NCBI RefSeq assembly: GCF_902652985.1
Contig: NC_047024.1
Span: 13,392,001-13,456,000, forward strand
DNA from: Pecten maximus
Lineage: Eukaryota
DNA length: 64,000 bases
Direction: 5' to 3'
In this document: positions 1-21,849 of the stretch, one piece after another
Layout: every line of letters starts with the position of its first letter
Position numbering within the stretch: the stretch's first letter is position 1
The notes under the pieces: model-generated
Seen by the model: only the letters and a program-made list of their open reading frames with translations
What the model was told of the DNA's origin: nothing
Database searches by the model: none
Position numbers and translations under genes: made by a program

Positions 1-1157
1 TCACCAAACAGTCTATTTTTAGTTTCCACTGATGGGATGGAAAAGTAGAATTCCCTTCAAATTAGCTCCGACTAGTAGATTGATACGACATCTTGTATTA
101 CACATATGTGATTCATACCCACTGAAAAAATAGACAGAAAGTTGTTGTATTACTATTGTGAGATTACATTGGTATGTGATAAAATGAGGCTAGTGTGGCT
201 GGTCGTGAAAAAAACATAAATCTCCAAATTTATTGCTTACTCAAGGACAAATAATTTTCTAATTAACATTTTTATAACCCATTTTTGATTAATTTCAGGA
301 AGCAATCTGTAACCCGTATTAGTGGACTATCTATTTTTTTCAAATTTGTGGCTTATTCCTGAATTGAACGACAACTGAAGGAGGTAAATTTTGAGACCGT
401 CGACATCTTTAATTTCACAGAACGCGGTTATAACCAATAAATGGATAAACGTGTTTCAATCTCAACAACCATCACCATAATGTAACAACCACCATTTTTG
501 TTATTTGCATATTTAATAAAATCAAATAAGTGCTGTTATTGTTGGTCATTAATTCCAAAATCAAAATACCGGTTAACACTAGCCAACTCTCAAAACAGCT
601 ATACAGTATTGTAAGTAGTTATAATTATAACAGTGTTCCCTGTTATATGTCAACAGCTTGGTTTTCTTTGATGTAACGCCCGACCACAAGCAATGGTCAT
701 TTTAGGACGGCATTTAGTATGTGGGTGTATGTGTTCAATATTTGTGCATTCGTATGAGTTTCCTTGTGGTAGTGGCGAACTGATGTGGTGCCGCCTCATA
801 AAGTATTGTCAATGACATCAGGAAACCACACCCGAACACACTGCCACTCCCCTTCCATATGCTATTGATAAACAGGAAGTAGAAACTTCCGTGTTAAAGG
901 TCTCTGATATATCTTTATGTAGATCAAGAAAAGAACCCAAAGCCTTCCTCACAAGGGAGAAAGCTCAACTTAAAGGTCAATTACAATGATTTTTTTTTCA
1001 AAAAGTTTAAATCACTTGAATAGAACCTTAAACTATTCTGAAAATGATTGTTCCGTTTTGTTTTATTAAATTTCACGCCAATCGCCAGGTATCGCAAATA
1101 AACAAACACCTGAGATCGCTATAGCAAAATATCACACGAGTGACTTTCCTTTGCTCG

Positions 1158-1182
1158 TGACGTCACTGATGACAGTCGAGAA
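1158..1182 (+). promoter_or_regulatory. Subterminal motif with CRE/ATF site (TGACGTCA) upstream of the THAP ATG
   Basis: TGACGTCACTGATGACAGTCGAGAA; inverted copy (23/25) at 3636-3660. Confidence 0.55.
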
Positions 1183-1235
1183 GAAACGCGTAGCCATATT
1201 GAAATCACTGACCTGTAGTAGCTGACACATCGGGC

Positions 1236-2042
1236 ATGGTTCAATGCGCTGCATATAATGGTACCGTCAAGTCGGGACAAGGGCTCAGCCTTTATATATT
1301 CCCAAAGGATAAGACACTGAGAAAGATATGGACGGCAAAGCTCAGAAGGCAGGATTTTTCCCCAAGCCAACATTCTAAACTTTGCGAGCGGCACTTCGAG
1401 GACGACCAATTTGCAGTGAACCCCATTGTATTGAAGTCACTTTCCTGGACACTGAAAAGAAAGAAATTAGTCCCGAATGCCGTGCCGACAATTTTCGATT
1501 ACAAAAGGAAGATAGTAGAAGCAAAAAGGAAGTCCACGTTTCAAGCAAAAATGACGACGGATAGAGGTAAATTAATTGGAAGGATGGAGCATTTCTTACC
1601 CCAAGGCAAGAAACGGAGAAGGAGTTGCGAAAGAAGTGAAAGTAAAAGCAACATACGGTAAGAGATTGTGGTCTCAATTTGAAACATAAAAATGCATTTC
1701 TTGATCCTTATATGTACTTCAGTGAACAGAAGGTAAAAGTAAGTTATAAGTAATTGCTCAGCAGAGGATACTTTGAAGAATAAATAAAACAAGAAAGCTT
1801 TTCAGATCAGAAAAATGTATATGTATAACATTAATTGTATCAATTTTCATTTTACAGACAATGTTGAAGAACTTTTTGAAGACCCAATTCTTCGTAGAGA
1901 ATTAAACAACACATTCACGCAAGCCAGAGCAGCATGCAACATGCAAAATAAGGAGCGCCCATCTCCACTCTCGAAGAGTTGCACCCATGAAAGGAAGGAG
2001 GACATTGTGCATAGGCATAAATCAAGATTTAATGGACTTTGA
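1236..2042 (+). pseudogene. Internally deleted Kolobok transposase: THAP-domain exon (1236-1657) and C-terminal exon (1858-2042); no DDE core
   Basis: MVQCAAYNG..FPKD..RKIW..LCERHFEDDQF..LVPNAVPTIF matches the THAP signature (second Zn-ligand Cys reads Gly). GT donor at 1658, tttacAG acceptor at 1857. Last exon ends ..PSPL..KEDIVHRHKSRF, like Kolobok transposase C-termini. Donor is phase 2 but the acceptor needs phase 1. Confidence 0.8.
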
Positions 2043-2272
2043 AAGTGCTAGAGTGAGCTTGATGGATATACGTTAGACTGACTTTTATAAGAGTGTAAAT
2101 TCAATACCCGGAAACTATTGTCTGTTTTGTTCAACTTGAACATGAATTATATTGACATTGAAAACGTTGTGAATAATGGATTGTAATTCAGTTGAAAATA
2201 AATTGCTGGACAGTTAATAAATTCTGTACATAAAACATGTTTGACTTGTTTATTATTTGTATTGATTACTAT

Positions 2273-3631
2273 TTAGTTCAATGATGGGTATTTTAATCCA
2301 CAATATTGTGCTGATGGAAATGTTTTTCTAATTGACGACACAACACACGATGGCAACACTTTTCTGTTTCCTTTCCCAAGTCTTTGGTAAAATCCATTGT
2401 GTGAGGTTCCAGTAGGCTATGTATCTGTAGACTCTACAAAATATAAAAGAATGATGATAAGAAGGAACAACATGACTTCAAAATGGACAAGTTTCTGCTT
2501 AGTTTGTGCCATAATATTATTATCATTTAGCAAACATAATACATCCAAAAATATTTGCATGCTAGTTATTGAATTAAATTCATGAGAATTTCATCATCCA
2601 TCTAAATGCAAGTCTGAAAACTGACAAACCTGACCAAGATTGTTCTTCATCTGGGAAAGTACAATGCAGGCTTGATTTTTATTGGATATGTTGACAATTG
2701 GATGTAAATTGCACCCAAAATGTTAAAGACAGTGGGTAAAAACTGTTTCTTCAGAATATAAACGTAATTAACTTACACATGGATGTCACCACACTTGCTG
2801 AGATCCTTCCTCTGTTCATTGTATCTGTAATGGCACATCTCGATGACATGCCTGTTGAGGCAGTTCCCCTTGAAACCCCCGTGATCTGTAATACAGGCCA
2901 GGCCTGCTTCCTACGCCTTTTCATGCACAAGATGTGAATATACACAACACTTATTTTCTAAGTCAGTTGGCTGTTTACACAGTTTCCACAAGTACACCTG
3001 CAATACATATAATGACTATTGAGTAGTGACTTTGACTATGACCACACAGATAATCAGTAAATTAGCGGTATATAGTAATGATATTAGTTTTCTAAAAGCT
3101 TACACGGATGTCAGAAAAGGAAACTCGTTATTGATATAAATTCACTATGAAAAAGGTGAAAAATAGTTATCGAAATGTATGGCCAATGCTAAGACGGTGT
3201 ACAGGACTTCATTCCGCCATCTTGCGGCGTCACTCCACTACAGCTCAGAGGTATAGATTTCAATAGCGATTAAAGCTTATATTAATTTATCTTATTTTCT
3301 CACATTCACTGGATAACCATGGTGAAAAATTCATATACTAATATATGTAAATTAAGTAGGAACTTTAAGAAGCGTACATCTAGATTACCACTAACCTGTT
3401 CTCGTTTGCGATCGTTGGGCCATCAGAAACGGCGAACCTGTCGGAACTGTCTAATAAGAAGTCTTCTCCGTCCGAATCTGAGCGGTCAGAATCGTCATCA
3501 GATGATTCGTGTGACTTTTGTCCTTGACCTCTTATAGGTTCATACATATATGGTTGGATTTTGACAGAAAGCTCGAAGTCAACATCGTGTATATCATCCT
3601 TGCTGTCGTACACGGGTACTAGGGCCGCCAT
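2273..3631 (-). pseudogene. KolX-like (P2X7 C-terminal ballast/nanor-like Cys-rich) gene, 3 exons: 3631-3396, 2997-2777, 2433-2273
   Basis: Spliced (all GT-AG, phase 2): MAALV..IQPYMYEP..acidic tract..|RCTCGNC..PT..ENKCC..CITDHGGFKGNCLNRHVI..|VYRYIAY..W..LGKGNRKVLPSCVVSSIRKTFPSAQYCG, the characteristic motifs of this domain. Disabled by a 1-bp deletion and TAG in exon 2 and a +1 frameshift in exon 3 (~2390). Confidence 0.85.
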
Positions 3632-3635
3632 GCTG

Positions 3636-3660
3636 TTCTCGATTGTCATTAGTGACGTCA
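3636..3660 (-). promoter_or_regulatory. Inverted copy of the CRE-containing subterminal motif, just upstream of the KolX ATG
   Basis: Minus strand TGACGTCACTAATGACAATCGAGAA; present only in copy 1. Confidence 0.55.
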
Positions 3661-4332
3661 TCAATATAGGATATCAAGAACGATAACTCGTGCCAATGCT
3701 CGATGTTCAGATGTTATTTACAGGTAAACGAGGTGACATAAAAATGTAAAAAAACTTTTCTCTCTATTCTAATATATTCTCTTATAATTGATGGATAATT
3801 TTAATTTTAATTTTCGTTAGAATTGACCTTTGAGGCTAAAAGCGAGGCAGTGTCAAGGGAGATATCAGGAAGAAAATGATGTTCAGAAAAAAACAACAAA
3901 CAAAAACAACTGGAACCTTATACATGTAGTCCCCACTTAAAATTATGCAATCGGACAGGAGGCCATTTTAGGAGAAATACGCTTCTTTTAGGTCGTGTAC
4001 CATTGATATAGGTATTATATGCTTATATGACATATACACTCTACCCTCTATCGTCCCACAGTAGTTGCGTCCGAAAAATATAATATTTCTTTGAATATTT
4101 GTTTTTCTTAATTTGTTCGCAATGTAACCTATTTCGTACTTTCAATTTTCTCTGTATTGTCAATAGAACCTTACCAAACATTATTCAATGTTCATAATTT
4201 CGATTGCTGTAGTGAACAAGGAACAATTTTTGCAATTGCATAATTTATAATTTAAATTTACGTTATATTTCCATCTGAAAAAATTCTCCCAAATAAGTCG
4301 CGACGTCAGAATAATTAACAGTTCATAGTATG

Positions 4333-5600
4333 TCATACAGTATCGTCATCGTCGCAGTCATTGATTAGAAGGATTCTTCGGTATTTCCTCGGAGATTCAG
4401 TAACTTGAGAGGAAGAAGATTGTAATGGTATTTGAAATGAAACACCGCAAGAAACATTCGCCCCGAAAAAAAAAATCCAATGGTAAGACTTGACATTCTC
4501 GGTATCGTTGTAGTTTTAACCGATGCGGCCGCATCTTCATTTCTCGAATGTCCTATTTCACAACAAGAAATGTTGATGATGCACATTTTGGTGACAGAGC
4601 TGCTTTTGGGACATTTGGTAAGATTTCACGGCGTTGATTCGTAGACACCATTGTATTATTGTTTACACTATTTACATATTTGTTGCCACTAATCAACTGC
4701 ATGATCGTTGTCGGTGCGACGCCCGAATGCAAAAGTTTTGTTCGTAGAGTTGTTCGGCTACAAGGCCAGCATTGTTTGCCATTGTTTTGAACATCACAGA
4801 AAGTTTAGTTTTCCAACTGGCTGATTTTTAAAGCACTTTTTACCGTTCTCGTTATGATTAATACGTTGTAGCGATTCGGCAGTGTTCATTTCATCAGGCA
4901 TATGATTTGTGTAAAGTTTATGGGTTTTCGTCGACCTTTCATTGAATTCAAAATTTCTAAATTCCGAGGTTGTCAAACCAGGCTGTAGCAGGCAACAGAA
5001 CAGAGGGAAATGTTTATTTCAATAAAGTCGATATATCTAAAAATGTTAGAGGAGTTATTTGTTTTCAATTATATCTAGATATAGAATATTGTTTGTAAAA
5101 TATTTCCATATCTTTAAATAAAGGTAATAAGATACAGCGGCAGTTCATTTCATCCAACCAACAGTCTATTTCAAGTTGTAATTGCTGGGATTGACAGGAG
5201 AATTCCCTTAGAATAAGCTCCGACTGGTATAGTGATACAACATCTTGTATTACACATATGTGATACAAACCCACATAAAACATGGACAGAAAGTTGTTGT
5301 ATTACTATTGTGAGATTACATTGGTATGTGATAAAATGAGGTCACTATGCTGGTCGTGAAAAAGCATGAATCTCCAAATTTATTGCTTACTCAAGGACAA
5401 ATAATTTTTTTAATTAACATTTTTATAACCCATTTTTAATTAATTTCAGGAAGCAATCTGTAACCCGTATTAGTGAAATGTCTTTTTTTCGAAATCGTGC
5501 CTTATTCCTGAATTGAACGATAACTGAAGGAGATAAAATTTTTGGCCGTCGACATCTTTAATTTCACAGATCGCGGTTATAACCAATAAATGGATAAACG
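4333..5600 (-). pseudogene. Decayed Crypton-type tyrosine recombinase (DUF3504; KIAA1958/QRICH1/ZMYM-like)
   Basis: Minus-strand fragments in the expected order: YWL..CEIKDVDG..SGI; FEFNERSTKT; KLYTNHMPDEMNTAES; CFKNQPVGK; KLSVMFKTMANNAGL; TKLLHSGVAPT(T/A)IMQLISGNKYVNSVNNN..NQRREI; and a C-terminal FFGAN..SPRKYRRILLIND.DDD tail. Many frameshifts. Confidence 0.75.
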
Positions 5601-6384
5601 TGTTTCAATCTCAACAACCATCCTCAAAATGTAACCACCACCATTTTTGTTATTTGCATATTTAATAAAATCAAATAAGTGCTGTTATTGTTGGTCATTA
5701 ATTCCAAAATCAAAATACCGGTTAACACTAGCAAACTCTCAAAACAGCTATACAGTATTGTAAGTAGTTATAATTATAACAGTGTTCCCTGTTATATGTC
5801 AACAGCTTGGTTTTCTTTGATGTAACGCCCGACCACAAGCAATGGTCATTTTAGGACGGCATTTAGTATGTGGGTGTATGTGTTCAATATTTGTGCATTC
5901 GTATGAGTTTCCTTGTGGTAGTGGCGAACTGATGTGGTGCCGCCTCATAAAGTATTGTCAATGACATCAGGAAACCACACCCGAACACACTGCCATTCCC
6001 CTTCCATATGCTATTGATAAGCAGGAAGTAGAAACTTCCGTGTTAAAGGTCTCTGATATATCTTTATGTAGATCAAGAAAAGAACCCAAAGCCTTCCTCA
6101 CAAGGGAGAAAGCTCAACTTAAAGGTCAATTACAATGATTTTTTTTTCAAAAAGTTTAAATCACTTGAATAGAACCTTAAACTATTCTGAAAATGATTGT
6201 TCCGTTTTGTTTTATTAAATTTCACGCCAATCGCCAGGTATCGCAAATAAACAAACACCTGAGATCGCTATAGCAAAATATCACACGAGTGACTTTCCTT
6301 TGCTCGTGACGTCACTGATGACAGTCGAGAAGAAACGCGTAGCCATATTGAAATCACTGACCTGTAGTAGCTGACACATCGGGC

Positions 6385-7192
6385 ATGGTTCAATGCGCTG
6401 CATATAATGGTACCGTCAAGTCGGGACAAGGGCTCAGCCTTTATATATTCCCAAAGGATAAGACACTGAGAAAGATATGGACGGGAAAGCTCAGAAGGCA
6501 GGAGTTTTCCCCAAGCCAACATTCTAAACTTTGCGAGCGGCACTTCGAGGACGACCAATTTGCAGTGAACCCCATTGTATTGAAGTCACTTTCCTGGACA
6601 CTGAAAAGAAAGAAATTAGTCCCGAATGCCGTGCCGACAATTTTCGATTACAAAAGGAAGATAGTAGAAGCAAAAAGGAAGTCCACGTTTCAAGCAAAAA
6701 CGACGACGGATAGAGGTAAATTAATTGGAAGGATGGAGCATTTCTTACCCCAAGGCAAGAAACGGAGAAGGAGTTGCGAAAGAAGTGAAAGTAAAAGCAA
6801 CATATGGTAAGAGATTGTGGTCTCAATTTGAAACATAAAAAATGCATTTCTTGATCCTTATATGTACTTCAGTGAACAGAAGGTAAAAGTAAGTTATAAG
6901 TAATTGCTCAGCAGAGGATACTTTGAAGAATAAATAAAACAAGAAAGCTTTTCAGATCAGAAAAATGTATATGTATAACATTAATTGTATCAATTTTCAT
7001 TTTACAGACTATGTTGAAGAACTTTTTGAAGACCCAATTCTTCGTAGAGAATTAAACAACACATTCACGCAAGCCAGAGCAGCATGCAACATGCAAAATA
7101 AGGAGCGCCCATCTCCACTCTCGAAGAGTTGCACCCATGAAAGGAAGGAGGACATTGTGCATAGGCATAAATCAAGATTTAATGGACTTTGA
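6385..7192 (+). pseudogene. THAP/transposase remnant, copy 2
   Basis: ORFs 6385-6810 and 6965-7192, near-identical to copy 1. Confidence 0.8.
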
Positions 7193-7422
7193 AAGTGCTA
7201 GAGTGAGCTTGATGGATATACGTTAGACTGACTTTTATAAGAGTGTAAATTCAATACCCGGAAACTATTGTCTGTTTTGTTCAACTTGAACATTAATTAT
7301 ATTGACATTGAAAACGTTGTGAATAATGGATTGTAATTCAGTTGAAAATAAATTGCTGGACAGTTAATAAATTCTGTACATAAAACATGTTTGACTTGTT
7401 TATTATTTGTATTGATTACTAT

Positions 7423-8744
7423 TTAGTTCAAGGATGGGTATTTTAATCCACAATATTGTGCTGATGGAAATGTTTTTCTAATTGACGACACAACACACGA
7501 TGGCAACACTTTTCTGTTTCCTTTCCCAAGTCTTTGGTAAAATCCATTGTGTGAGGTTCCAGTAGGCTATGTATCTGTAGACTCTACAAAATATAAAGAA
7601 TGATGATAAGAAGGAACAACATGACTTCAAAATGGACAAGTTTCTGCTTAGTTTGTGCCATAATATTATTATCATTTAGCAAACATAATACATCCAAAAA
7701 TATTTGCATGCTAGTTATTGAATTAAATTCATGAGAATTTCATCATCCATCTAAATGCAAGTCTGAAAACTGACAAACCTGACCAAGATTGTTCTTCATC
7801 TGGGAAAGCACAATGCAGGCTTGATTTTTATTGGATATGTTGACAATTGGATGTAATTTGCACCCAAAATGTTATAAGACAGTGGGTAAAAACTGTTTCT
7901 TCAGAATATAAACGTAATTAACTTACACATGGATGTCACCACACTTGCTGAGATCCTTCCTCTGTTCATTGTATCTGTAATGGCACATCTCGATGACATG
8001 CCTGTTGAGGCAGTTCCCCTTGAAACCCCCGTGATCTGTAATACAGGCCAGGCCTGCTTCCTACGCCTTTTCATGCACAAGATGTGAATATACACAACAC
8101 TTATTTTCTAAGTTAGTTGGCATGTTTACATAGTTTCCACAAGTACACCTGCAATATATATAATGACTATTGAGTAGTGACTTTGACTATGACCACACAG
8201 ATAATCAGTAAATTAGCGGTATATAGCAATGATATTAGTTTTTCTAAAAGCTTACACGGATGTCAGAAAAGGAAACTCGTTATTGATATAAATTCACTAT
8301 GAAAAAGGTGAAAAATAGTTATCGAAATGTACGGCCAATGCTAAGACGGTGAACAGGGCTTCATTCCGCCATCTTGTGGCGTCACCCCACTACAGCTCAG
8401 AAGTATAGATTTCAATAGCGATTAAAGCTTATATTAATTTATCTTATTTTCTCACATTCACTGGATATCCATGGTGAAAAATTCATATACTAATATATGT
8501 AAATTAAGTAGGAACTTTAAGAAGCGTACATTTAGATTACCACTAACCTGTTCTCGTTTGCGATCGTTGGGCCATCAGAAACGGCGAACCTGTCGGAACT
8601 GTCTAATAAGAATGCTTCTCCGTCCGAATCTGAGCGGTCAGAATCGTCATCAGATGATTCGTGTGACTTTTGTCCTTGACCTCTTATAGGTACATACATA
8701 TATGGTTGGATTTTGACAGAAAGCTCGAAGTCAACATCTTGTAT
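7423..8744 (-). pseudogene. KolX-like gene copy 2, start codon deleted
   Basis: Homologous to 2273-3592; 5' end removed by the ~185-bp deletion. Confidence 0.8.
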
Positions 8745-9292
8745 TCTCTTATAATTGATGGATAATTTTAATTTTAATTTTCGTTAGAATTGACCTTTGA
8801 GGCTAAAAGCGAGGCAGTGTCAAGGGAGATATCGGGAAGAAAATGATGTTCAGAAAAAAACAACAAACAAAAACAACTGGAACCTTATACATGTAGTCCC
8901 CACTTAAAATTATGCAATCGGACAGCAGGCCATTTTAGGAGAAATACGCTTCTTTTAGGTCGTGTACCACTGATATAGGTATTATATGCTTATATGACAT
9001 ATGCACTCTATCGTCCAACAGTAGTTGTGTCCGAAAAATATAATATTTCTTGAATATTCTTTTTTCTTAATTTGTTCGCAATGTAACCTATTTCGTACTT
9101 TCAATTTTCTCTGTATTGTCAACAGAACCTTACCAAACAATATCCAATGTTCATAATTTCGATTGCTGTAGTGAACAAGGAACAATTTTCGCGATTGCAT
9201 AATTGATAATTTAGATTTACGTTATATTTCCATCTGAAAAAATTCTCCCAAATAAGTCGCGACGTCAGAATATATTCACAGTTCATAGCATG

Positions 9293-10560: not shown

Positions 10561-11343
10561 GTTTCAATCTCAACAACCATCCTCAAAATGTAACCACCAC
10601 CATTTTTGTTATTTGCATATTTAATAAAATCAAATAAGTGCTGTTATTGTTGGTCATTAATTCCAAAATCAAAATACCGGTTAACACTAGCAAACTCTCA
10701 AAACAGCTATACAGTATTGTAAGTAGTTATAATTATAACAGTGTTCCCTGTTATATGTCAACAGCTTGGTTTTCTTTGATGTAACGCCCGACCACAAGCA
10801 ATGGTCATTTTAGGACGGCATTTAGTATGTGGGTGTATGTGTTCAATATTTGTGCATTCGTATGAGTTTCCTTGTGGTAGTGGCGAACTGATGTGGTGCC
10901 GCCTCATAAAGTATTGTCAATGACATCAGGAAACCACACCCGAACACACTGCCATTCCCCTTCCATATGCTATTGATAAGCAGGAAGTAGAAACTTCCGT
11001 GTTAAAGGTCTCTGATATATCTTTATGTAGATCAAGAAAAGAACCCAAAGCCTTCCTCACAAGGGAGAAAGCTCAACTTAAAGGTCAATTACAATGATTT
11101 TTTTTTCAAAAAGTTTAAATCACTTGAATAGAACCTTAAACTATTCTGAAAATGATTGTTCCGTTTTGTTTTATTAAATTTCACGCCAATCGCCAGGTAT
11201 CGCAAATAAACAAACACCTGAGATCGCTATAGCAAAATATCACACGAGTGACTTTCCTTTGCTCGTGACGTCACTGATGACAGTCGAGAAGAAACGCGTA
11301 GCCATATTGAAATCACTGACCTGTAGTAGCTGACACATCGGGC

Positions 11344-12151
11344 ATGGTTCAATGCGCTGCATATAATGGTACCGTCAAGTCGGGACAAGGGCTCAGCCTT
11401 TATATATTCCCAAAGGATAAGACACTGAGAAAGATATGGACGGGAAAGCTCAGAAGGCAGGAGTTTTCCCCAAGCCAACATTCTAAACTTTGCGAGCGGC
11501 ACTTCGAGGACGACCAATTTGCAGTGAACCCCATTGTATTGAAGTCACTTTCCTGGACACTGAAAAGAAAGAAATTAGTCCCGAATGCCGTGCCGACAAT
11601 TTTCGATTACAAAAGGAAGATAGTAGAAGCAAAAAGGAAGTCCACGTTTCAAGCAAAAACGACGACGGATAGAGGTAAATTAATTGGAAGGATGGAGCAT
11701 TTCTTACCCCAAGGCAAGAAACGGAGAAGGAGTTGCGAAAGAAGTGAAAGTAAAAGCAACATATGGTAAGAGATTGTGGTCTCAATTTGAAACATAAAAA
11801 ATGCATTTCTTGATCCTTATATGTACTTCAGTGAACAGAAGGTAAAAGTAAGTTATAAGTAATTGCTCAGCAGAGGATACTTTGAAGAATAAATAAAACA
11901 AGAAAGCTTTTCAGATCAGAAAAATGTATATGTATAACATTAATTGTATCAATTTTCATTTTACAGACTATGTTGAAGAACTTTTTGAAGACCCAATTCT
12001 TCGTAGAGAATTAAACAACACATTCACGCAAGCCAGAGCAGCATGCAACATGCAAAATAAGGAGCGCCCATCTCCACTCTCGAAGAGTTGCACCCATGAA
12101 AGGAAGGAGGACATTGTGCATAGGCATAAATCAAGATTTAATGGACTTTGA
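11344..12151 (+). pseudogene. THAP/transposase remnant, copy 3
   Basis: ORFs 11344-11769 and 11924-12151, same translation as copy 2. Confidence 0.8.
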
Positions 12152-12379
12152 AAGTGCTAGAGTGAGCTTGATGGATATACGTTAGACTGACTTTTATAAG
12201 AGTGTAAATTCAATACCCGGAAACTATTGTCTGTTTTGTTCAACTTGAACATTAATTATATTGACATTGAAAACGTTGTGAATAATGGATTGTAATTCAG
12301 TTGAAAATAAATTGCTGGACAGTTAATAAATTCTGTACATAAACATGTTTGACTTGTTATTATTTGTATTGATTACTAT

Positions 12380-13701
12380 TTAGTTCAAGGATGGGTATTT
12401 TAATCCACAATATTGTGCTGATGGAAATGTTTTTCTAATTGACGACACAACACACGATGGCAACACTTTTCTGTTTCCTTTCCCAAGTCTTTGGTAAAAT
12501 CCATTGTGTGAGGTTCCAGTAGGCTATGTATCTGTAGACTCTACAAAATATAAAAGAATGATGATAAGAAGGAACAACATGACTTCAAAATGGACAAGTT
12601 TCTGCTTAGTTTGTGCCATAATATTATTATCATTTAGCAAACATAATACATCCAAAAATATTTGCATGCTAGTTATTGAATTAAATTCATGAGAATTTCA
12701 TCATCCATCTAAATGCAAGTCTGAAAACTGACAAACCTGACCAAGATTGTTCTTCATCTGGGAAAGCACAATGCAGGCTTGATTTTTATTGGATATGTTG
12801 ACAATTGGATGTAATTTGCACCCAAAATGTTATAAGACAGTGGGTAAAAACTGTTTCTTCAGAATATAAACGTAATTAACTTACACATGGATGTCACCAC
12901 ACTTGCTGAGATCCTTCCTCTGTTCATTGTATCTGTAATGGCACATCTCGATGACATGCCTGTTGAGGCAGTTCCCCTTGAAACCCCCGTGATCTGTAAT
13001 ACAGGCCAGGCCTGCTTCCTACGCCTTTTCATGCACAAGATGTGAATATACACAACACTTATTTTCTAAGTCAGTTGGCTGTTTACACAGTTTCCACAAG
13101 TACACCTGCAATATATATAATGACTATTGAGTAGTGACTTTGACTATGACCACACAGATACTCAGTAAATTAGCGGTATATAGCAATGATATTAGTTTTT
13201 CTAAAAGCTTACACGGATGTCAGAAAAGGAAACTCGTTATTGATATAAATTCACTATGAAAAAGGTGAAAAATAGTTATCGAAATGTACGGCCAATGCTA
13301 AGACGGTGAACAGGGCTTCATTCCGCCATCTTGTGGCGTCACCCCACTACAGCTCAGAAGTATAGATTTCAATAGCGATTAAAGCTTATATTAATTTATC
13401 TTATTTTCTCACATTCACTGGATAACCATGGTGAAAAATTCATATACTAATATATGTAAATTAAGTAGGAACTTTAAGAAGCGTACATTTAGATTACCAC
13501 TAACCTGTTCTCGTTTGCGATCGTTGGGCCATCAGAAACGGCGAACCTGTCGGAACTGTCTAATAAGAATGCTTCTCCGTCCGAATCTGAGCGGTCAGAA
13601 TCGTCATCAGATGATTCGTGTGACTTTTGTCCTTGACCTCTTATAGGTACATACATATATGGTTGGATTTTGACAGAAAGCTCGAAGTCAACATCTTGTA
13701 T
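12380..13701 (-). pseudogene. KolX-like gene copy 3, start codon deleted
   Basis: Homologous to copy 1; shares copy 1's 1-bp exon-2 deletion. Confidence 0.8.
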
Positions 13702-14256
13702 TCTCTTATAATTGATGGATAATTTTAATTTTAATTTTCGTTAGAATTGACCTTTGAGGCTAAAAGCGAGGCAGTGTCAAGGGAGATATCAGGAAGAAAA
13801 TGATGTTCAGAAAAAAACAACAAACAAAAACAACTGGAACCTTATACATGTAGTCCCCACTTAAAATTATGCAATCGGACAGGAGGCCATTTTAGGAGAA
13901 ATACGCTTCTTTTAGGTCGTGTACCATTGATATAGGTATTATATGCTTATATGACATATACACTCTACCCTCTATCGTCCCACAGTAGTTGCGTCCGAAA
14001 AATATAATATTTCTTTGAATATTTGTTTTTCTTAATTTGTTCGCAATGTAACCTATTTCGTACTTTCAATTTTCTCTGTATTGTCAATAGAACCTTACCA
14101 AACATTATTCAATGTTCATAATTTCGATTGCTGTAGTGAACAAGGAACAATTTTTGCAATTGCATAATTTATAATTTAAATTTACGTTATATTTCCATCT
14201 GAAAAAATTCTCCCAAATAAGTCGCGACGTCAGAATAATTAACAGTTCATAGAATG

Positions 14257-15530
14257 TCATACAGTATCGTCATCGTCGGCGTCATTGATTAGAAGGATTC
14301 TTCGGTATTTCCTCGGAGATTCAGTAACTTGAGAGGAAGAAGATTGTAATGGTATTTGAAATGAAACACCGCAAGAAACATTCGCCCCGAAAAAAAAAAT
14401 CCAATGGTAAGACTTGACATTCTCGGTATCGTTGTAGTTTTAACCGATGCGGCTGCATCTTCATTTCTCGAATGTCCTATTTCACAACAAGAAATGTTGA
14501 TGATGCACATTTTGGTGACAGAGCTGCTTTTGGGACATTTGGTAAGATTTCACGGCGTTGATTCGTAGACACCATTGTATTATTGTTTACACTATTTACA
14601 TATTTGTTGCCACTAATCAACTGCATGATCGCTGTCGGTGCGACGCCCGAATGCAAAAGTTTTGTTCGCAGAGTTGTTCGGCTACAAGGCCAGCATTGTT
14701 TGCCATTGTTTTGAACATCACAGAAAGTTTAGTTTTCCAACTGGCTGATTTTAAAAGCACTTTTTATCGTTCTCGTTATGATTAATACGTTGTAGCGATT
14801 CGGCAGTGTTAATTTCATGAGGCATATGATTTGTGTAAAGTTTATGGGTTTTCGTCGACCTTTCATTGAATTCAAAATTTCTAAATTCCGAGGTTGTCAA
14901 ACCAGGCTGTAGCAGGCAACAGAACAGAGGGAAATGTTTATTTCAATAAAGTCGATATATCTAAAAATGTTAGAGGAGTTATTTGTTTTCAATTATATCT
15001 AGATATAGAATATTGTTTGTAAAATATTTCCATATCTTTAAATAAAGGTAATAAGATACAGCGGCAGTTCATTTCATCCAACCAACAGTCTATTTCAAGT
15101 TGTAATTGCTGGGATTGAGAGGAGAATTCCCTTAGAATAAGCTCCGACTGGTATAGTGATACAACATCTTGTATTACACACATGTGATACAAACCCACAT
15201 AAAACATGGACAGAAAGTTGTTGTATTACTATTGTGAGATTACATTGGTATGTGATAAAATGAGGTCACTATGCTGGTCGTGAAAAAGCATAAATCTCAA
15301 AATTTATTGCTTACTCAAGGACAAATGATTTTCTAATTAACATTTTTATAACCCATTTTTGATTAATTTCAGGAAGCAATCTGTAACCCGTATTAGTGAA
15401 ATGTCTTTTTTTTCGAAATCGTGCCTTATTCCTGAATTGAACGATAACTGATCATGAAGGAGATAAAAATTTTGGCCGTCGACATCTTTAATTTCACAGA
15501 TCGCGGTTATAACCAATAAATGGATAAACG
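14257..15530 (-). pseudogene. Crypton-type recombinase remnant, array copy
   Basis: Homologous to 4333-5600. Confidence 0.75.
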
Positions 15531-16300
15531 TGTGTCAATCTCAACAACCATCCGCAAAATGTAACCACCATTTTTGTTTTTTGCATATTTAATAAAATCA
15601 AATAAGTGCTGTTATTGTTGGTCATTAATTCCAAAATCAAAATACCGTTTAACAGCTATACAGTATTGTACGTAGTTATAATTATAACAGTGTTCCCTGT
15701 TATATGTCAACAGCTTGGTTTTATTTGATGTAACGCCCGACCACAAGCAATGATCATTTGAGGACGGCACTTAGTATGTGGGTGTATGTGTTCAATATTT
15801 GTGCATTCGTATGAGTTTCCTTGTGGTAGTGGCGAACTGATGTGGACTTGATAGTGCCGCCTCATAAAGTATTGTCAATGACACCAGGAAACCTCACCCG
15901 AACACACTGCCACCCCCCTTCCATATGCTATTGATAAGCAGGCAGTAGAAACTTCCGTGTTAAAGGTCTCTGAGATATCTACATGTAGATCAAGAAAAGA
16001 AACCAAAGCCTTCCTCACAAGGGAGAAAGCTCAACTTAAAGGTCAATTAAAATGGGTTTTTTTCAAACAGTTTAAATCACTTGAATAGAACCTTAAACTA
16101 TTCTGAAAATGATTGTTCCGTTTTGTTTTATTAAATTTCACGCCAATCGCCAGGTATCGCAAATAAACAAACACCTGAGATCGCTATAGCAAAATAGCAC
16201 ACGAGTGACTTTCCTTTGCTCGTGACGTCACTGATGACAGTCGAGAAGAAACGCGTAGCCATATTGAAATCACTGACCTGTAGTAGCTGACTCATCGGGC

Positions 16301-17084
16301 ATGGTTCAATGCGCTGCATATAATGGTACCGTCAAGTCGGGACAAGGGCTCAGCCTTTATATATTCCCAAAGGATAAGACACTGAGAAAGATATGGATGG
16401 GAAAGCTCAGAAGGCAGGTTTTTTTCCCCAAGCCAACATTCTAAACTTTGCGAGCGGTACTTCGAGGACGACCAATTTGCAGTGAACCCCAGTCACTTTC
16501 CTGGACACTGAAAAGAAAGAAATTAGTCCCTAATGCCGTGCCGACAAATTTCGATTATAAAAGGAAGATAGTAGAAGCAAAAAGGAAGTCCACGTTTCAA
16601 GCAAAAACGACGACGGATAGAGGTAAATTAATTGGAAAGATGGAGCATTTCTTACCCCAAGGCAAGAAACGGAGAAGGAGTTGCGAAAGACGTGAAAGTA
16701 AAAGCAACATATGGTAAGAGATTGTGGTCTCAATTTGAAACATAAAAAATGCATTTCTTGATCCTTATATGTACTTCAGTGAACAGAAGGTAAAAGTAAG
16801 TTATAAGTAATAGCTCAGCAGAGGATACTTTGAAGAATAAATAAAACAAGAAAGCTTTTCAGATCAGAAAAATTTATATGTAACATTAATTGTATCAATT
16901 TTCATTTTACAGACTATGTTGAAGAACTTTTTGAAGACCCAATTCTTCGTAGAGAATTAAACAACACATTCACGCAAGCCAGAGCAGCATGCAACATGCA
17001 AAATAAGGAGCGCCCATCTCCACTCTCGAAGAGTTGCACCCATGAAAGGTGCATAGGCATAAATCAAGATTTAATGGACTTTGA
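16301..17084 (+). pseudogene. THAP/transposase remnant, copy 4, frameshifted
   Basis: ATG at 16301; 1-bp insertion near 16420, 10-bp deletion near 16490, 13-bp deletion near 17050 relative to copy 1. Confidence 0.8.
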
Positions 17085-17314
17085 AAGTGCTAGAGTGAGC
17101 TTGATGGATATACGTTAGACTGACTTTTATAAGAGTGTAAATTCAATACCCGGAAACTATTGTCTGTTTTGTTCAACTTGAACATTAATTATATTGACAT
17201 TGAAAACGTTGTGAATAATGGATTGTAATTCAGTTGAAAATAAATTGCTGGACAGTTAATAAATTCTGTACATAAAACATGTTTGACTTGTTTATTATTT
17301 GTATTGATTACTAT

Positions 17315-18636
17315 TTAGTTCAAGGATGGGTATTTTAATCCACAATATTGTGCTGATGGAAATGTTTTTCTAATTGACGACACAACACACGATGGCAACA
17401 CTTTTCTGTTTCCTTTCCCAAGTCTTTGGTAAAATCCATTGTGTGAGGTTCCAGTAGGCTATGTATCTGTAGACTCTACAAAATATAAAAGAATGATGAT
17501 AAGAAGGAACAACATGACTTCAAAATGGACAAGTTTCTGCTTAGTTTGTGCCATAATATTATTATCATTTAGCAAACATAATACATCCAAAAATATTTGC
17601 ATGCTAGTTATTGAATTAAATTCATGAGAATTTCATCATCCATCTAAATGCAAGTATGAAAACTGACAAAACTGACCAAGATTGTTCTTCATCTGGGAAA
17701 GCACAATGCAGGATTGAATTTTATCGGATATGTTGACAATTGGATGTAATTTGCACCCAAAATGTTATAAGACAGTGGGTAAAAACTGTTTCTTCAGAAT
17801 ATAAACGTAATTGACTTACACATGGATGTCACCACACTTGCTGAGATCCTTCCTCTGTTCATTGTATCTGTAATGGCACATCTCGATGACATGCCTGTTG
17901 AGGCAGTTCCCCTTGAAACCCTCGTGATCTGTAATACAGGCCAGGCCTGCTTCCGACGCCTTGTCATGCACAAGATGTGAATATACACAACACTTATTTT
18001 CTAAGTTAGTTGGCATGTTTACATAGTTTCCACAAGTACACCTGCAATATATATAATGACTATTGAGTAGTGACTTTGACTATGACCACACAGATACTCA
18101 GTAAATTAGCGGTATATAGCAATGATATTAGTTTTCTAAAAGCTTACACGGATGTCAGAAAAGGAAACTCGTTATTGATATAAATTCACTATGAAAAAGG
18201 TGAAAAATAGTTATCGAAATGTATGGCCAATGCTAAGACGGTGTACAGGACTTCATTCCGCCATCTTGTGGCGTCACCCCACTACAGCTCAGAAGTATAG
18301 ATTTCAATAGCGATTAAAGCTTATATTAATTTATCTTATTTTCTCACATTCACTGGATATCCATGGTGAAAAATTCATATACTAATATATGTAAATTAAG
18401 TAGGAACTTTAAGAAGCGTACATTTAGATTACCACTAACCTGTTCTCGTTTGCGATCGTTGGGCCATCAGAAACGGCGAACCTGTCGGAACTGTCTAATA
18501 AGAATGCTTCTCCGTCCGAATCTGAGCGGTCAGAATCGTCATCAGATGATTCGTGTGACTTTTGTCCTTGACCTCTTATAGGTACATACATATATGGTTG
18601 GATTTTGACAGAAAGCTCGAAGTCAACATCTTGTAT
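17315..18636 (-). pseudogene. KolX-like gene copy 4, start codon deleted; exon 2 open
   Basis: ORF 17816-18016 MPTNLENKCC..CITDHEGFKGNCLNRHVI is uninterrupted in this copy. Confidence 0.8.
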
Positions 18637-19191
18637 TCTCTTATAATTGATGGATAATTTTAATTTTAATTTTCGTTAGAATTGACCTTTGAGGCTAAAA
18701 GCGAGGCAGTGTCAAGGGAGATATCAGGAAGAAAATGATGTTCAGAAAAAAACAACAAACAAAAACAACTGGAACCTTATACATGTAGTCCCCACTTAAA
18801 ATTATGCAATCGGACAGGAGGCCATTTTAGGAGAAATACGCTTCTTTTAGGTCGTGTACCATTGATATAGGTATTATATGCTTATATGACATATACACTC
18901 TACCCTCTATCGTCCCACAGTAGTTGCGTCCGAAAAATATAATATTTCTTTGAATATTTGTTTTTCTTAATTTGTTCGCAATGTAACCTATTTCGTACTT
19001 TCAATTTTCTCTGTATTGTCAATAGAACCTTACCAAACATTATTCAATGTTCATAATTTCGATTGCTGTAGTGAACAAGGAACAATTTTTGCAATTGCAT
19101 AATTTATAATTTAAATTTACGTTATATTTCCATCTGAAAAAATTCTCCCAAATAAGTCGCGACGTCAGAATAATTAACAGTTCATAGAATG

Positions 19192-20458
19192 TCATACAGT
19201 ATCGTCATCGTCGGCGTCATTGATTAGAAGGATTCTTCGGTATTTCCTCGGAGATTCAGTAACTTGAGAGGAAGAAGATTGTAATGGTATTTGAAATGAA
19301 ACACCGCAAGAAACATTCGCCCCGAAAAAAAAAATCCAATGGTAAGACTTGACATTCTCGGTATCGTTGTAGTTTTAACCGATGCGGCTGCATCTTCATT
19401 TCTCGAATGTCCTATTTCACAACAAGAAATGTTGATGATGCACATTTTGGTGACAGAGCTGCTTTTGGGACATTTGGTAAGATTTCACGGCGTTGATTCG
19501 TAGACACCATTGTATTATTGTTTACACTATTTACATATTTGTTGCCACTAATCAACTGCATGATCGCTGTCGGTGCGACGCCCGAATGCAAAAGTTTTGT
19601 TCGCAGAGTTGTTCGGCTACAAGGCCAGCATTGTTTGCCATTGTTTTGAACATCACAGAAAGTTTAGTTTTCCAACTGGCTGATTTTAAAAGCACTTTTT
19701 ATCGTTCTCGTTATGATTAATACGTTGTAGCGATTCGGCAGTGTTCATTTCATGAGGCATATGATTTGTGTAAAGTTTATGGGTTTTCGTCGACCTTTCA
19801 TTGAATTCAAAATTTCTAAATTCCGAGGTTGTCAAACCAGGCTGTAGCAGGCAACAGAACAGAGGGAAATGTGTATTTCAATAAAGTCGATATATCTAAA
19901 AATGTTAGAGGAGTTATTTGTTTTCAATTATATCTAGATATAGAATATTGTTTGTAAAATATTTCCATATCTTTAAATAAAGGTAATAAGATACAGCGGC
20001 AGTTCATTTCATCCAACCAACAGTCTATTTCAAGTTGTAATTACTGGGATTGACAGGAGAATTCCCTTACAATAAGCTCCGACTGGTATAGTGATACAAC
20101 ATCTTGTATTACACATATGTGATACAAACCCACATAAAACATGGACAGAAAGTTGTTGTATTACTATTGTGAGTTTACATTGGTATGTGATAAAATGAGG
20201 TCACTGTGCTGGTCGTGAAAAAGCATAAATCTCCAAATTTATTGCTTACTCAAGGACAAATGATTTTCTAATTAACATTTTTATAACCCATTTTTGATTA
20301 ATTTCAGGAAGCAATCTGTAACCCGTATTAGTGAAATGTCTTTTTTTCGAAATCGTGCCTTATTCCTGAATTGAACGATAACTGAAGGAGATAAAATTTT
20401 TGGCCGTCGATATCTTTAATTTCACAGATCGCGGTTATAACCAATAAATGGATCAACG
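19192..20458 (-). pseudogene. Crypton-type recombinase remnant, array copy
   Basis: Homologous to 4333-5600. Confidence 0.75.
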
Positions 20459-20936
20459 TGTTTCAATCTCAACAACCATCCTCAAAATGTAACCACCATT
20501 TTGTTTTTTGCATATTTAATAAAATCAAATTTATGTTGCTATTGTTGGTCTTTAATACTGAAATCAATATACCGATTGACACTAGCAAACTCTCAAAACA
20601 GCTACAGTATTGTAATTTGTTATAATTATAACAGTGTTCCCTGTTACATGTCAACAGCTTGGTTTTATTTGATGTAACGCCCGACCAACAGCAATGGTCA
20701 TTTGAGGACGGCATTAAGTATGTGGGTGTATGTGTTGAATATTTGTGCTGTATGTTCGTATGAGTTTCCTTGTGGTAGTGGCGAGCTGATGTGGACATGA
20801 CCCCCCCCCCCCCCCCCCCCCCCCATGCTATTGATAAGCAGGGAAGTAGACACTTTCGTGTTAAAAGACTCTGATATATCTATATGAAGATCAGGAAAAG
20901 AACCCAAAGCCTTCCTCACAAGGGAGAAAGCTCAAC

Positions 20937-20940
20937 TTAA
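20937..20940. other. Empty (uninserted) TTAA target site of the Kolobok element
   Basis: aagctcaac-TTAA-ggccaaaagttaggcagtgt joins the left flank (aagctcaac-TTAA) directly to the right flank (TTGA-ggctaaaagcgaggcagtgt) of the filled copies. Confidence 0.95.
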
Positions 20941-21849
20941 GGCCAAAAGTTAGGCAGTGTAAAGGGAGATATCAGGAAGAAAAAGATGTTCAAAAAACCT
21001 TATAAATGTAGTCACCACTTAAGAATTATACAACGTGACAGCAGGTCATTTTTAGGAGAGATAAGTTTCTTATAGGTCGTGTACCACTAATATAGGTACT
21101 ATATGCTTATATGACATATGCCCTCTACCCCTATCGTTCAACAGAAGTCGCGTCCGAAAAATATGATATTTCTTTAAATAATTTGTTCGCAGTGCAACCT
21201 ATTTCGTACAAGAATTCTCTCGACGAATTGAGGTTGTTGGCGATATGCCATGTTTTGTGTGTATATTACAGTATTTCTATTTTCTCTGCGTTGTCAATAA
21301 ATCCTTACCAAACAAAATTCATTTTTCGTAATTTTTACATTGGTGCAGTGATACGAAGAACAATTTGCAACAATTTATGTAGTTCTGTTGTATTAAAGAT
21401 GAACATCCTAATGATAAAAGATGTTAATAAAAAAATGATGTTGTTTATTTCCACGAGGTTGTATTGATAATATTGCTGTGTAATATTTAAAAGAAAAACG
21501 AGTGTATGGGAAAATCTGTTTTGCTTTGAAATAAAACTGAAATAAAACTAAAAACTTCAGTTTCTACTTTGAAAATGGCCGTCACGTTCCCAGATAATCA
21601 CGAATAATAATTTATCTTACAACTGTGAATCAACTTTCTAACGGTACATGGTATATTTATGCTGCTTTACACATTAAACCTCCTAATCTTGAATTCAATA
21701 TGGCTTCCTCGTCCTAGAATCTGAATGGCCATGTCAGTTCTGGTCCACATCGTAGTCCTAATTGTCAAAGTCTACATACCTAATACCTGTTAGTTGCGAA
21801 ATCTATATTACTTTAGCTTTGTCTTAAACCTTTTCACTTTTGAATGCGA

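What the first reader, a model, noticed from the sequence alone, without database searches (positions are those of the whole stretch)
970..20940. Nested transposon-in-transposon macro-array: Kolobok inside a Crypton relic, amplified four times, with its own empty site next door
Seen: four ~5-kb head-to-tail units, each a 2.3-kb host plus a 2.65-2.86-kb TIR element. The fifth host copy has a single TTAA (20937-20940) exactly where the others carry TTAA-element-TTGA. All four filled copies share the mutated right TSD (TTGA), so one insertion was later amplified, rather than four separate transpositions. Known: TTAA TSD, AG..CT ends, THAP and a convergent KolX gene define Kolobok. Inference: the window records the full order of events (host duplication, insertion, TSD mutation, array expansion), i.e. 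a macrosatellite forming from two dead DNA transposons.
Basis: partly seen in the sequence, partly recalled or inferred. Interest (0 to 1): 0.8.

Follow-up and report, generated by a model that had tools for sequence, protein, structure and literature searches.

The report
Dead Kolobok transposon amplified fourfold
In what is evidently the king scallop genome, one dead Kolobok DNA transposon that landed between two old duplicate stretches of DNA was later copied into a four-unit, 5-kb tandem array by unequal recombination: a tidy but ordinary case of transposons seeding tandem repeats.

Summary
Window 3-20940 is a head-to-tail array of four ~5-kb units. Each unit has a 2.65-2.86-kb element with AGGTCAATT... 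inverted ends, flanked by TTAA on the left and TTGA on the right, plus a 2.3-kb host segment. A single TTAA sits at 20937-20940.

The element is a Kolobok of the KolX-bearing (Kol0) lineage. A 7.3-kb relative on another chromosome has perfect TTAA duplications, a THAP exon, Kolobok-type DDE blocks and a convergent P2X7-ballast-like gene.

The window copies are dead. They lack 4.49 kb of catalytic core, a THAP zinc ligand is mutated, and KolX is frameshifted.

- The TTAA target lies in an old copy of a high-copy ~0.5-kb repeat, not in Crypton sequence. The Crypton-like recombinase relic covers about 1 kb of the host unit, 0.5-0.8 kb from the site.
- The "empty site" is paralogous. It belongs to the second copy of an ancient 2.29-kb tandem duplication.
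- Diagnostic sites switch sharply (44:4 then 1:40), which maps one founding unequal crossover between those two paralogs.

Copy number 4 rests on the assembly. Short-read contigs from other animals confirm the empty junction, the element-to-host junction and more than one copy, but not four.

Ordinary biology, unusually well recorded.

The parts
3..969 (+). P0: right part of the older host paralogue D1. Its left 485 bp are private 'alpha' type. Its right ~480 bp are the type found left of every element copy.
970..973 (.). Left TTAA target-site duplication of E1. The same string is at 6119, 11078 and 16036.
974..3830 (+). E1: internally deleted Kolobok copy of 2857 bp. It is the only copy that keeps the ~185 bp at about 3590-3775 that E2-E4 lack.
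1236..1661 (+). THAP-only ORF of 141 aa. It is open in E1-E3 and frameshifted in E4. The second zinc-binding Cys is Gly in all four window copies.
   Evidence: Pfam THAP E=3.3e-15. Compared with the C18, C3953 and C17 copies.
1574..1579 (.). Junction of the 4.49-kb internal deletion that removed the DDE core. It lies at element position 607/608 and shows 2-bp TG microhomology.
2276..3673 (-). Remains of the KolX gene, convergent with the THAP gene. Exon pieces lie at 3383-3673, about 2744-3004 and 2276-2477. The last exon is frameshifted and the middle exon has a stop in E1-E3.
3831..3834 (.). Right duplication mutated to TTGA. The same string is at 8798, 13755 and 18690.
3835..6118 (+). H1: recombinant host unit, made of Q, then beta-left, then alpha-right. 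H2 is 8802-11077 and H3 is 13759-16035.
4330..4928 (-). Crypton-like tyrosine-recombinase relic. It repeats at about 9290-9887, 14254-14852 and 19189-19787. DNA similarity to the dispersed family spans host positions 480-1505.
   Evidence: tblastn E=4e-27. Dispersed relatives carry DUF3504 and Phage_integrase.
5636..5677 (.). Interval of the founding unequal crossover, host positions 1802-1807 or at most 1802-1843. The equivalent points are 487-528 in P0 and 20494-20531 in H4.
6123..8797 (+). E2.
11082..13754 (+). E3, which differs from E2 by 0.15%.
16040..18689 (+). E4, which has the most private changes. Its THAP ORF is broken and its KolX middle exon is still open.
18694..20936 (+). H4: Q plus beta-left of the array type, then a private, older 'beta-right' from about 20498 onward. 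It contains a poly-C tract at 20801-20824.
20937..20940 (.). Unoccupied paralogous TTAA.
   Evidence: Contigs 20911-21715 in runs X1 and X2 contain this junction, reaching only 26-30 bases left of it.
20941..21366 (+). Q': end of the ancient duplicate D2, 77-80% identical to host positions 1-395.
20835..20996 (+). Old copy of the high-copy dispersed repeat 'S' that spans the TTAA. The filled counterpart is split between the end and the start of each host unit.

Best explanation
The locus records a five-step history.

1. A stretch of locus-specific DNA already carried an old Crypton-like recombinase relic and an old copy of a short high-copy repeat, S. A 2.29-kb piece of it was tandemly duplicated long ago into D1 and D2, which are now 76-89% identical.

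2. A Kolobok transposon of the KolX-bearing Kol0 lineage inserted into the TTAA of the S copy in D1. The paralogous TTAA in D2 stayed empty.

3. The element lost 4.49 kb (its DDE core), and the right target duplication mutated from TTAA to TTGA. The deletion happened before or just after insertion.

4. One unequal homologous crossover between D1 and D2, about 480 bp left of the TTAA, duplicated the interval 'alpha-right, element, Q, beta-left'.

5. One daughter element lost ~185 bp. Further unequal exchanges between units then raised the count to four.

The array does nothing: every coding part of the element is broken.

Shown directly: the junctions, the shared lesions, the mosaic of diagnostic sites, and the family identity. 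Inferred: the recombination mechanism and the order of steps.
For: Genome identity. The assembly statistics (918,306,378 bp, 3,983 contigs, contig 10 = 44,824,366 bp) equal those published for Pecten maximus (PMC7191990).

Kolobok identity.
- TTAA lies next to AGGTCAATT termini at both ends of the 7.3-kb C18 copy, at the C3953 left end and at the C5 right end.
- THAP scores E=3.3e-15.
- Blocks in the longer copies line up with Kolobok_1_BF in the published alignment: GDGRCCSPGH, AME..E, TDR, FDCWHVAK, W..NH.YW, EKW.S..NH..N.H...C.H and LEAFH.
- The KolX last exon of the C18 copy scores 27.6 bits on P2RX7_C, over the cut-off, and matches P2X7 residues 546-592 at E=0.002.

Single insertion. All four copies share TTGA, the deletion at element position 607/608, the THAP Cys-to-Gly change and the KolX frameshift. 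No other genomic copy has that deletion.

Ancient duplication.
- Host positions 1511-2176 and 66-476 occur only at this locus.
- The homology ends at host position 408 upstream and 395 downstream, as expected for a two-unit duplication.
- Both paralogues have TTAA where the S-family consensus has TAAA.

Founding crossover. In host positions 1320-1802, P0 has 44 private sites and H4 has 4. In positions 1807-2288, P0 has 1 and H4 has 40.

Expansion order. E2-E4 share the 185-bp deletion that E1 and the C18 copy lack. Pairwise distances are E2-E3 0.15%, E2/3-E4 about 1.2%, E1-E2/3 about 0.9% and E1-E4 1.8%.

Independent samples.
- Contigs in X1 and X2 cover 20911-21715 across the empty junction.
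- In X1, separate beta-right and non-beta-right (alpha-right-like) contigs exist, at depths 27 and 59.8.
- A 2185-bp contig of organism B runs from the element's right end through Q and beta-left.
Against: - No long reads were available, so four copies rests on the assembly.
- In three other animals the host-region contigs sit at only about 2-3 times the depth of the flank. Each animal also shows a single variant at three sites where the assembly's copies differ.
- The contigs at the empty site reach only 26-30 bases to its left, under the tool's 31-base rule for bridging.
- The left 650 bp of H2 carries about 27 private differences, half of them matching the outgroup Q'. A simple crossover history does not explain this; it may be a haplotype switch in the consensus or a gene conversion.
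- D1/D2 identity is uneven, from 76% to 89%.
- The Kolobok DDE match was judged block by block against a published alignment, without an E-value.
- Precise excision from D2 cannot be formally excluded.
Confidence: 0.85

Rival explanations
1. The tandem structure is partly an assembly artefact. The real locus would have fewer units, for example two, and the assembler stacked haplotypes or over-expanded the repeat.
For: - Contig depths over the host units are only about 2-3 times the unique flank in runs X1, X2 and X5.
- Each run shows a single variant at 19188, 19214 and 19215, where the assembly's copies differ.
- The assembly is a wtdbg2 PacBio CLR consensus of a highly heterozygous animal.
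- H2 carries an odd block of private variants.
Against: - The window has no gaps.
- The copies differ in a structured, tree-like and mosaic way, not as identical clones.
- The recombinant host unit followed by an element can only exist if at least two elements are in tandem.
- Those three runs are other individuals, so they bear on polymorphism rather than on the assembled animal.
- The assembly is shorter than the estimated genome size, which suggests repeats were collapsed rather than expanded.
Confidence: 0.1
2. The duplication was made by the transposase itself, through aberrant or alternative transposition using ends of sister copies, or by multimer formation as proposed for KolobokP, rather than by host homologous recombination.
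For: Kolobok multimers, and unequal crossover between their long direct repeats, are discussed for KolobokP (PMC9587614). Alternative transposition can create tandem duplications (general knowledge).
Against: - The novel junction lies in host homology about 480 bp from the element end, not at a terminus.
- The elements keep identical flanks, including the mutated TTGA.
- This family has short inverted ends, not long terminal direct repeats.
Confidence: 0.03
3. There were four independent insertions of the same non-autonomous Kolobok into four pre-existing host repeats.
For: Kolobok targets TTAA, and each host unit offers the same TTAA.
Against: - All four copies share the same mutated TTGA, the same unique internal deletion, the same THAP Cys-to-Gly change and the same KolX frameshift.
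- Host units and elements diverge together.
- No copy with this deletion exists elsewhere in the genome.
Confidence: 0.01

Closest known systems
Kolobok superfamily, Kol0 lineage (Kolobok-1_XT, Kolobok-1_BF; Kapitonov and Jurka 2007 as cited in PMC9587614 and PMC6004289)
   Same: - TTAA target duplication and 5'-AG...CT-3' termini.
- An N-terminal THAP domain.
- DDE core blocks with the H2CH-type motif.
- A second, convergent KolX gene resembling the P2X7 cytoplasmic ballast.
   Different: The window copies are a 2.7-2.9-kb deletion derivative with no catalytic core, a broken THAP zinc site and a broken KolX. The family appears to be a scallop family that I could not match to a named Repbase entry, because no Repbase or Dfam was available here.
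Tandem arrays of transposons made by unequal exchange between flanking direct repeats, such as tandem LTR retrotransposons sharing one LTR, and KolobokP multimers (PMC12628747, PMC9587614)
   Same: Direct repeats on either side of an element recombine out of register and duplicate 'element plus one repeat'. Repeated rounds give (repeat-element)n-repeat.
   Different: Here the recombining repeats are not part of the element. They are two ~89%-identical copies of an older host duplication, and the founding crossover can still be placed to within 5-41 bp.
Crypton tyrosine-recombinase transposons and DUF3504 (Kojima and Jurka 2011, PMC3212892)
   Same: About 1 kb of the host unit is 67-79% identical to a dispersed family whose copies encode a ~300-aa DUF3504/Phage_integrase protein.
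   Different: Only a degraded fragment is present. The element boundaries of the family were not defined, no catalytic tetrad was checked, and the Kolobok did not insert into this part.
piggyBac, the other TTAA-targeting superfamily
   Same: A TTAA target-site duplication.
   Different: The termini are AGG...CCT, not CCC...GGG. The protein blocks are Kolobok-type with THAP. This option is rejected.

Membership tests
Kolobok (Kol0 lineage) | [quoted passage not shown] | tested here: met
   The C18 copy has TTAA on both sides. The C3953 left end and the C5 right end also have TTAA. The window copies have TTAA on the left and TTGA on the right.
Kolobok (Kol0 lineage) | Termini 5'-RR ... YY-3' (AG...CT) | tested here: met
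   AGGTCAATT...AATTGACCT in all copies examined. The criterion is taken from PMC9587614 and PMC6004289.
Kolobok (Kol0 lineage) | DDD/E transposase with Kolobok-type core blocks and the H2CH motif | tested here: inconclusive
   The window copies lack this part altogether. In the C18, C3953 and C17 relatives, the exons show GDGRCCSPGH, TDR, FDCWHVAK, NHIYW, EKWCSILNHVVNIHEGHGHLFPHCEH and LEAFH, in line with Kolobok_1_BF of the published alignment. The match was judged by eye, exon by exon, with no E-value. Pfam has no model that hit.
Kolobok (Kol0 lineage) | N-terminal THAP DNA-binding domain | tested here: met
   PF05485 E=3.3e-15 in the window copy and 1.7e-16 in the C18 copy. The AVPTIF box is present. 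The second Cys of C2CH is Gly in the window copies.
Kolobok (Kol0 lineage) | Second gene KolX, similar to the P2X7 cytoplasmic ballast | tested here: met
   The C18 copy scores 27.6 bits on PF20478, over the 23.5 cut-off, and E=0.002 to P2X7 residues 546-592. The window copy scores 18.6 bits, below the cut-off, and is frameshifted. The middle exon shows the C-x-C-x2-C...CC...CIT pattern of the published KolX alignment but gave no Pfam or PDB hit.
Crypton | Encodes a tyrosine recombinase (DUF3504/Phage_integrase type) | tested here: met
   Dispersed relatives score DUF3504 4.1e-24 and Phage_integrase 1.7e-9. The window relic aligns by tblastn at E=4e-27 on the minus strand at 4330-4928.
Crypton | The recombinase is the only enzyme, with no reverse transcriptase (which would indicate DIRS or Ngaro) | tested here: inconclusive
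   Other open frames within 1.5 kb of the recombinase ORF gave no Pfam hit. Full elements were not delimited.
Crypton | No terminal inverted repeats; short direct repeats at the ends | not tested
   The family boundaries were not determined.
Tandem array by unequal homologous recombination | Head-to-tail units in one phase, with a recombinant junction inside pre-existing direct repeats | tested here: met
   diagnostic sites run 44:4 and then 1:40 on either side of host positions 1802-1807.
Tandem array by unequal homologous recombination | Copy number confirmed by reads that span the units | not testable with these tools
   Only short-read contigs of other individuals were served. They show the empty junction, the element-to-host junction and a depth of about 2-3x.
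piggyBac | CCC...GGG termini and a piggyBac-type transposase | tested here: not met
   The termini are AGG...CCT, and the protein blocks are Kolobok-type.

The most novel reading that the evidence does not exclude
The array may not be inert. Four tandem copies carry a sense THAP gene facing an antisense KolX gene. These could be transcribed convergently and act as a small-RNA (piRNA-type) source, or as a decoy, that silences the Kolobok family. In that case the expansion would have been favoured and would vary in copy number among scallops.
Probability: 0.04. Interest if true: 0.55.

Novelty: new member of a known kind. Interest (0 to 1): 0.25.

Why it matters
It is a clean worked example of how a tandem repeat with a long unit can start. 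An old local duplication supplies the homology, a transposon lands between the two copies, and one out-of-register crossover, still placeable to within a few bases, begins an array that then grows and homogenises.

It also documents a KolX-bearing Kolobok family in a scallop, with a 7.3-kb near-complete relative. In addition, it shows that the genome carries dozens of P2X7-ballast-like KolX genes.

None of this changes current understanding. Its value is for annotation and teaching.

Tried and rejected
- TRF found no array because the period exceeds 500 bp. Self-BLAST was used instead.
- The KolX middle and first exons gave no Pfam hit and no PDB hit. Only the last exon is detectable.
- Pfam gave nothing for any DDE-core exon. 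A first motif search for the second-D block failed because the local motif is FDCWH. It was then found.
- I considered that the host units are similar only because each contains copies of dispersed repeats. I rejected this because host positions 1511-2176 and 66-476 exist nowhere else in the genome.
- I considered that the S repeat is part of the Crypton family. The other Crypton-like loci held here lack S. One locus on contig 4 (L040) does have both in the same order. This is unresolved because no more loci could be fetched.
- I tested whether H2's private block was converted from Q'. The result was 6 of 13 sites matching, which is undecided.
- My first element distances were inflated by a misplaced gap. 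They are corrected.
- A KP-repressor-like role for the THAP-only ORF is made unlikely by the Cys-to-Gly change at a zinc ligand.
- Contig depths are not copy numbers, as the tool itself warns, and I use them only as a hint.
- Exons were searched one by one.
Full report
WHERE THIS IS

The tools place the window at contig 10, 13,392,001-13,456,000, of a 918,306,378-bp assembly in 3,983 contigs. Contig 10 is 44,824,366 bp long. These three numbers are exactly those published for the king scallop Pecten maximus assembly, which was built from PacBio Sequel reads with wtdbg2 and polished with Arrow and freebayes (PMC7191990). The identification rests on that match alone. The window contains no N.

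THE OBSERVATION

A self-comparison of the window shows four collinear units of 5154, 4959, 4965 and 4935 bp from window 3 to about 20800. TRF missed the array because the period exceeds its limit.

- CTCAAC-TTAA-AGGTCAATTA at 970, 6119, 11078 and 16036.
- AATTGACCT-TTGA-GGCTAAAAG at 3831, 8798, 13755 and 18690.
- CTCAAC-TTAA-GGCCAAAAG once, at 20937-20940.

The elements are E1 974-3830, E2 6123-8797, E3 11082-13754 and E4 16040-18689. The host units are H1 3835-6118, H2 8802-11077, H3 13759-16035 and H4 18694-20936. A partial host copy, P0, lies at 3-969. Thirty kilobases upstream hold no further unit.

THE ELEMENT IS A KOLOBOK, AND A DEAD ONE

A search of the whole genome with E1 found three longer relatives, on contigs 18, 3953 and 17. 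In all three, element positions 1-607 and 608 onward are separated by 3.6-5.2 kb. The window copies are therefore internal-deletion derivatives, and no other genomic copy has this deletion.

The contig-18 copy is 7.3 kb long. It is flanked by TTAA on both sides, directly next to AGGTCAATT termini. The contig-3953 left end and a contig-5 right end show the same.

The published criteria for Kolobok are (PMC9587614; PMC6004289):
- a TTAA target,
- RR...YY termini,
- a DDD/E transposase, usually with THAP and an H2CH motif,
- and, in the Kol0 lineage, a second protein, KolX, that resembles the cytoplasmic ballast of P2X7.

How the family measures up:
- THAP is clear, at E=3.3e-15 in the window copy and 1.7e-16 in the contig-18 copy.
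- The exons of the longer copies contain GDGRCCSPGHTAKYSSYTVMD, an AME..E block, TDR, FDCWHVAK, NHIYW, EKWCSILNHVVNIHEGHGHLFPHCEH and LEAFH.
- These blocks line up one by one with Kolobok_1_BF in the published transposase alignment.
- I compared exon by exon and by eye. Pfam has no model that hits. I did not build or search a joined protein.
- On the opposite strand, the last KolX exon of the contig-18 copy passes the Pfam P2RX7_C cut-off at 27.6 bits. It also matches P2X7 residues 546-592 in solved structures at E=0.002.
- The window copy scores 18.6 bits, below the cut-off.
- The KolX middle exon shows the cysteine pattern of the published KolX alignment, but it gave no hit in Pfam or the PDB.

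The window copies are dead in every part:
- The DDE core is deleted, at a junction with 2-bp microhomology.
- The second zinc-binding cysteine of THAP is glycine in all four copies, but cysteine in the three relatives.
- The last KolX exon is frameshifted in all four copies.
- The KolX middle exon has a stop in E1-E3.
- E2-E4 have lost the start of KolX in a shared ~185-bp deletion.

THE HOST UNIT IS NOT SIMPLY A CRYPTON RELIC

Host positions 480-1505 are 67-79% identical to a dispersed family with hundreds of candidate copies. Copies of that family encode a ~300-aa protein with DUF3504 (4e-24) and Phage_integrase (1.7e-9). This is the signature that Kojima and Jurka tie to animal Cryptons (PMC3212892). 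A degraded remnant is visible on the minus strand at 4330-4928 and in each later unit.

The Kolobok did not land in it, however. Laying public contigs on the region showed enormous depth at the two ends of the host unit. A pattern search then found at least 490 genomic copies in which the host end and the host start are contiguous. The TTAA therefore lies inside an old copy of a separate repeat, here called S. Young S copies are about 0.5 kb long and 93-97% alike. The S consensus at that point reads TAAA, whereas both local copies read TTAA.

The remaining host segments, positions 66-476 and 1511-2176, occur nowhere else in the genome. They are locus-specific DNA.

AN ANCIENT TWO-UNIT DUPLICATION SUPPLIES THE 'EMPTY SITE'

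Host-like sequence continues at 76-80% identity on both sides of the array:
- upstream, from window -506 to -106, matching host positions 408-794;
- downstream, at 20941-21366, matching host positions 1-395.

The outer ends map to almost the same host position, 408 and 395. That is what a single old tandem duplication of a 2.29-kb segment predicts, giving copies D1 and D2.

The similarity covers locus-specific DNA, and both copies share the derived TTAA. The paralogy is therefore local and is not due to independent repeat insertions.

The unoccupied TTAA at 20937 is thus the paralogous site in D2. It is not an allele, and it is not a unit made during the expansion.

THE FOUNDING CROSSOVER

I aligned P0 with H1-H4 and classified the variable sites.

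| Host positions | P0 private sites | H4 private sites |
|---|---|---|
| 1320-1802 | 44 | 4 |
| 1807-2288 | 1 | 40 |

So P0 keeps D1's own left part, H4 keeps D2's own right part, and H1-H3 are recombinants with D2's left part and D1's right part.

This is the product expected from one unequal homologous crossover between D1 and D2. The crossover falls between host positions 1802 and 1807. If H4's 4-bp CCAT deletion is a later event, the interval widens to 1802-1843. The exchange duplicated the interval 'alpha-right, element, Q, beta-left'. Because it lies about 480 bp from the element's end, it points to host recombination rather than a transposase-made rearrangement.

LATER GROWTH

E1 keeps ~185 bp that the contig-18 relative also has and that E2-E4 lack, so E1 shows the ancestral state.

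With the gap placed correctly, the substitution distances are:

| Pair | Distance |
|---|---|
| E2-E3 | 0.15% |
| E2-E4 | 1.16% |
| E3-E4 | 1.24% |
| E1-E2 | 0.96% |
| E1-E3 | 0.88% |
| E1-E4 | 1.81% |

For scale, the element differs from its dispersed relatives by 7-10%, and D1 differs from D2 by 11-24%. The order duplication, then insertion, then expansion fits these figures.

The history is not purely tree-like. A few sites group E1 with E4 or E1 with E3. H2 also has about 27 private differences confined to its first 650 bp, half of which match the outgroup Q'. These may reflect gene conversion, exchange with another haplotype, or a haplotype switch in the consensus. I could not decide among them.

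IS THE ARRAY REAL?

Only short-read contigs from other individuals were available. There were three samples of the same species label and one of a second label. These contigs show the following:
- Contigs in two samples cover 20911-21715 and so contain the empty junction. They start only 26-30 bases to its left, where the sequence branches, which is just under the tool's 31-base rule for bridging.
- In X1 there are separate contigs of the beta-right type (depth 27, no differences) and of a non-beta-right, alpha-right-like type (depth 59.8).
- A 2,185-bp contig of the second organism runs from the element's right end through Q and beta-left.
- Host-unit contigs sit at about 2-3 times the depth of the unique flank.

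The tool warns that these depths are not copy numbers. Each sample also shows only one variant at three sites where the assembly's copies differ.

My reading is that more than one copy exists in several animals and that the number may vary. Four copies in the assembled animal remains unconfirmed. In its favour are the structured differences among the copies and the absence of gaps. The assembly is also shorter than the estimated genome size, which points to collapsed repeats rather than expanded ones.

COMPARISON AND VERDICT

The element is a new, unnamed member of the Kolobok Kol0 lineage in non-autonomous form. The amplification follows the known route by which direct repeats flanking a transposon recombine out of register (reviews PMC12628747; KolobokP multimers).

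What is slightly unusual is that the recombining repeats are an older host duplication rather than parts of the element. It is also unusual that every step can still be read from the sequence.

This is a sound finding of low surprise.

Two earlier notes from this scan on the same window describe the minimal Kolobok and the Crypton fossil. They agree with what I found.

Noticed in passing
window 20835-20996, and split across each host end and start; young copies at L040:2590-3125 and L062:3585-4089: A high-copy dispersed repeat, here called S, about 0.5 kb long. It has at least 490 exact-pattern copies genome-wide, and young copies are 93-97% alike. One young copy sits inside the 7.3-kb Kolobok on contig 18. 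Its type (SINE, MITE or other) was not determined.
   Followed up: partly
window 20801-20824: A 24-base poly-C tract sits where the other host copies have ordinary sequence. A contig from another animal agrees with this copy apart from 15 gap positions, so the tract appears real but variable in length.
   Followed up: partly
window 8802-9450 (first ~650 bp of H2): A block of about 27 differences private to H2, roughly 4% divergence, with none further along the unit. Half of the testable sites match the outgroup Q'. This could be gene conversion, exchange with another haplotype, or a haplotype switch in the assembly.
   Followed up: partly
L040 (contig 4, about 11.32 Mb): A second locus carries Crypton-like sequence followed by an S copy, in the same order and orientation as the host unit, at 73-78% identity. 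The host composite may therefore have an older relative elsewhere. No more loci could be fetched to check.
   Followed up: no
window 1147-1182 and 3636-3671: A 36-nt subterminal inverted repeat with a TGACGTCA core lies about 175 bp inside each end of E1. These may be binding or promoter sites. The right arm is lost in the deletion shared by E2-E4.
   Followed up: no
whole genome: Fifty-three P2RX7_C-like matches are spread over many contigs, many with open frames of 100-175 aa. This suggests numerous KolX-bearing Kolobok families in this scallop.
   Followed up: no
window 29663-30839, 34219-34563, 37224-37966, 49965-50737, 57221-59049, 60746-61390: The rest of the window is dense with minisatellites: 21 bp x55, 54 bp x6 at 97% identity, 28 bp x26, 28 bp x28 at 94%, 29 bp x63 at 93%, and a 40/80/253-bp nested array. 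The long ORFs at 29.6-31.0 kb are artefacts of the 21-bp repeat.
   Followed up: no
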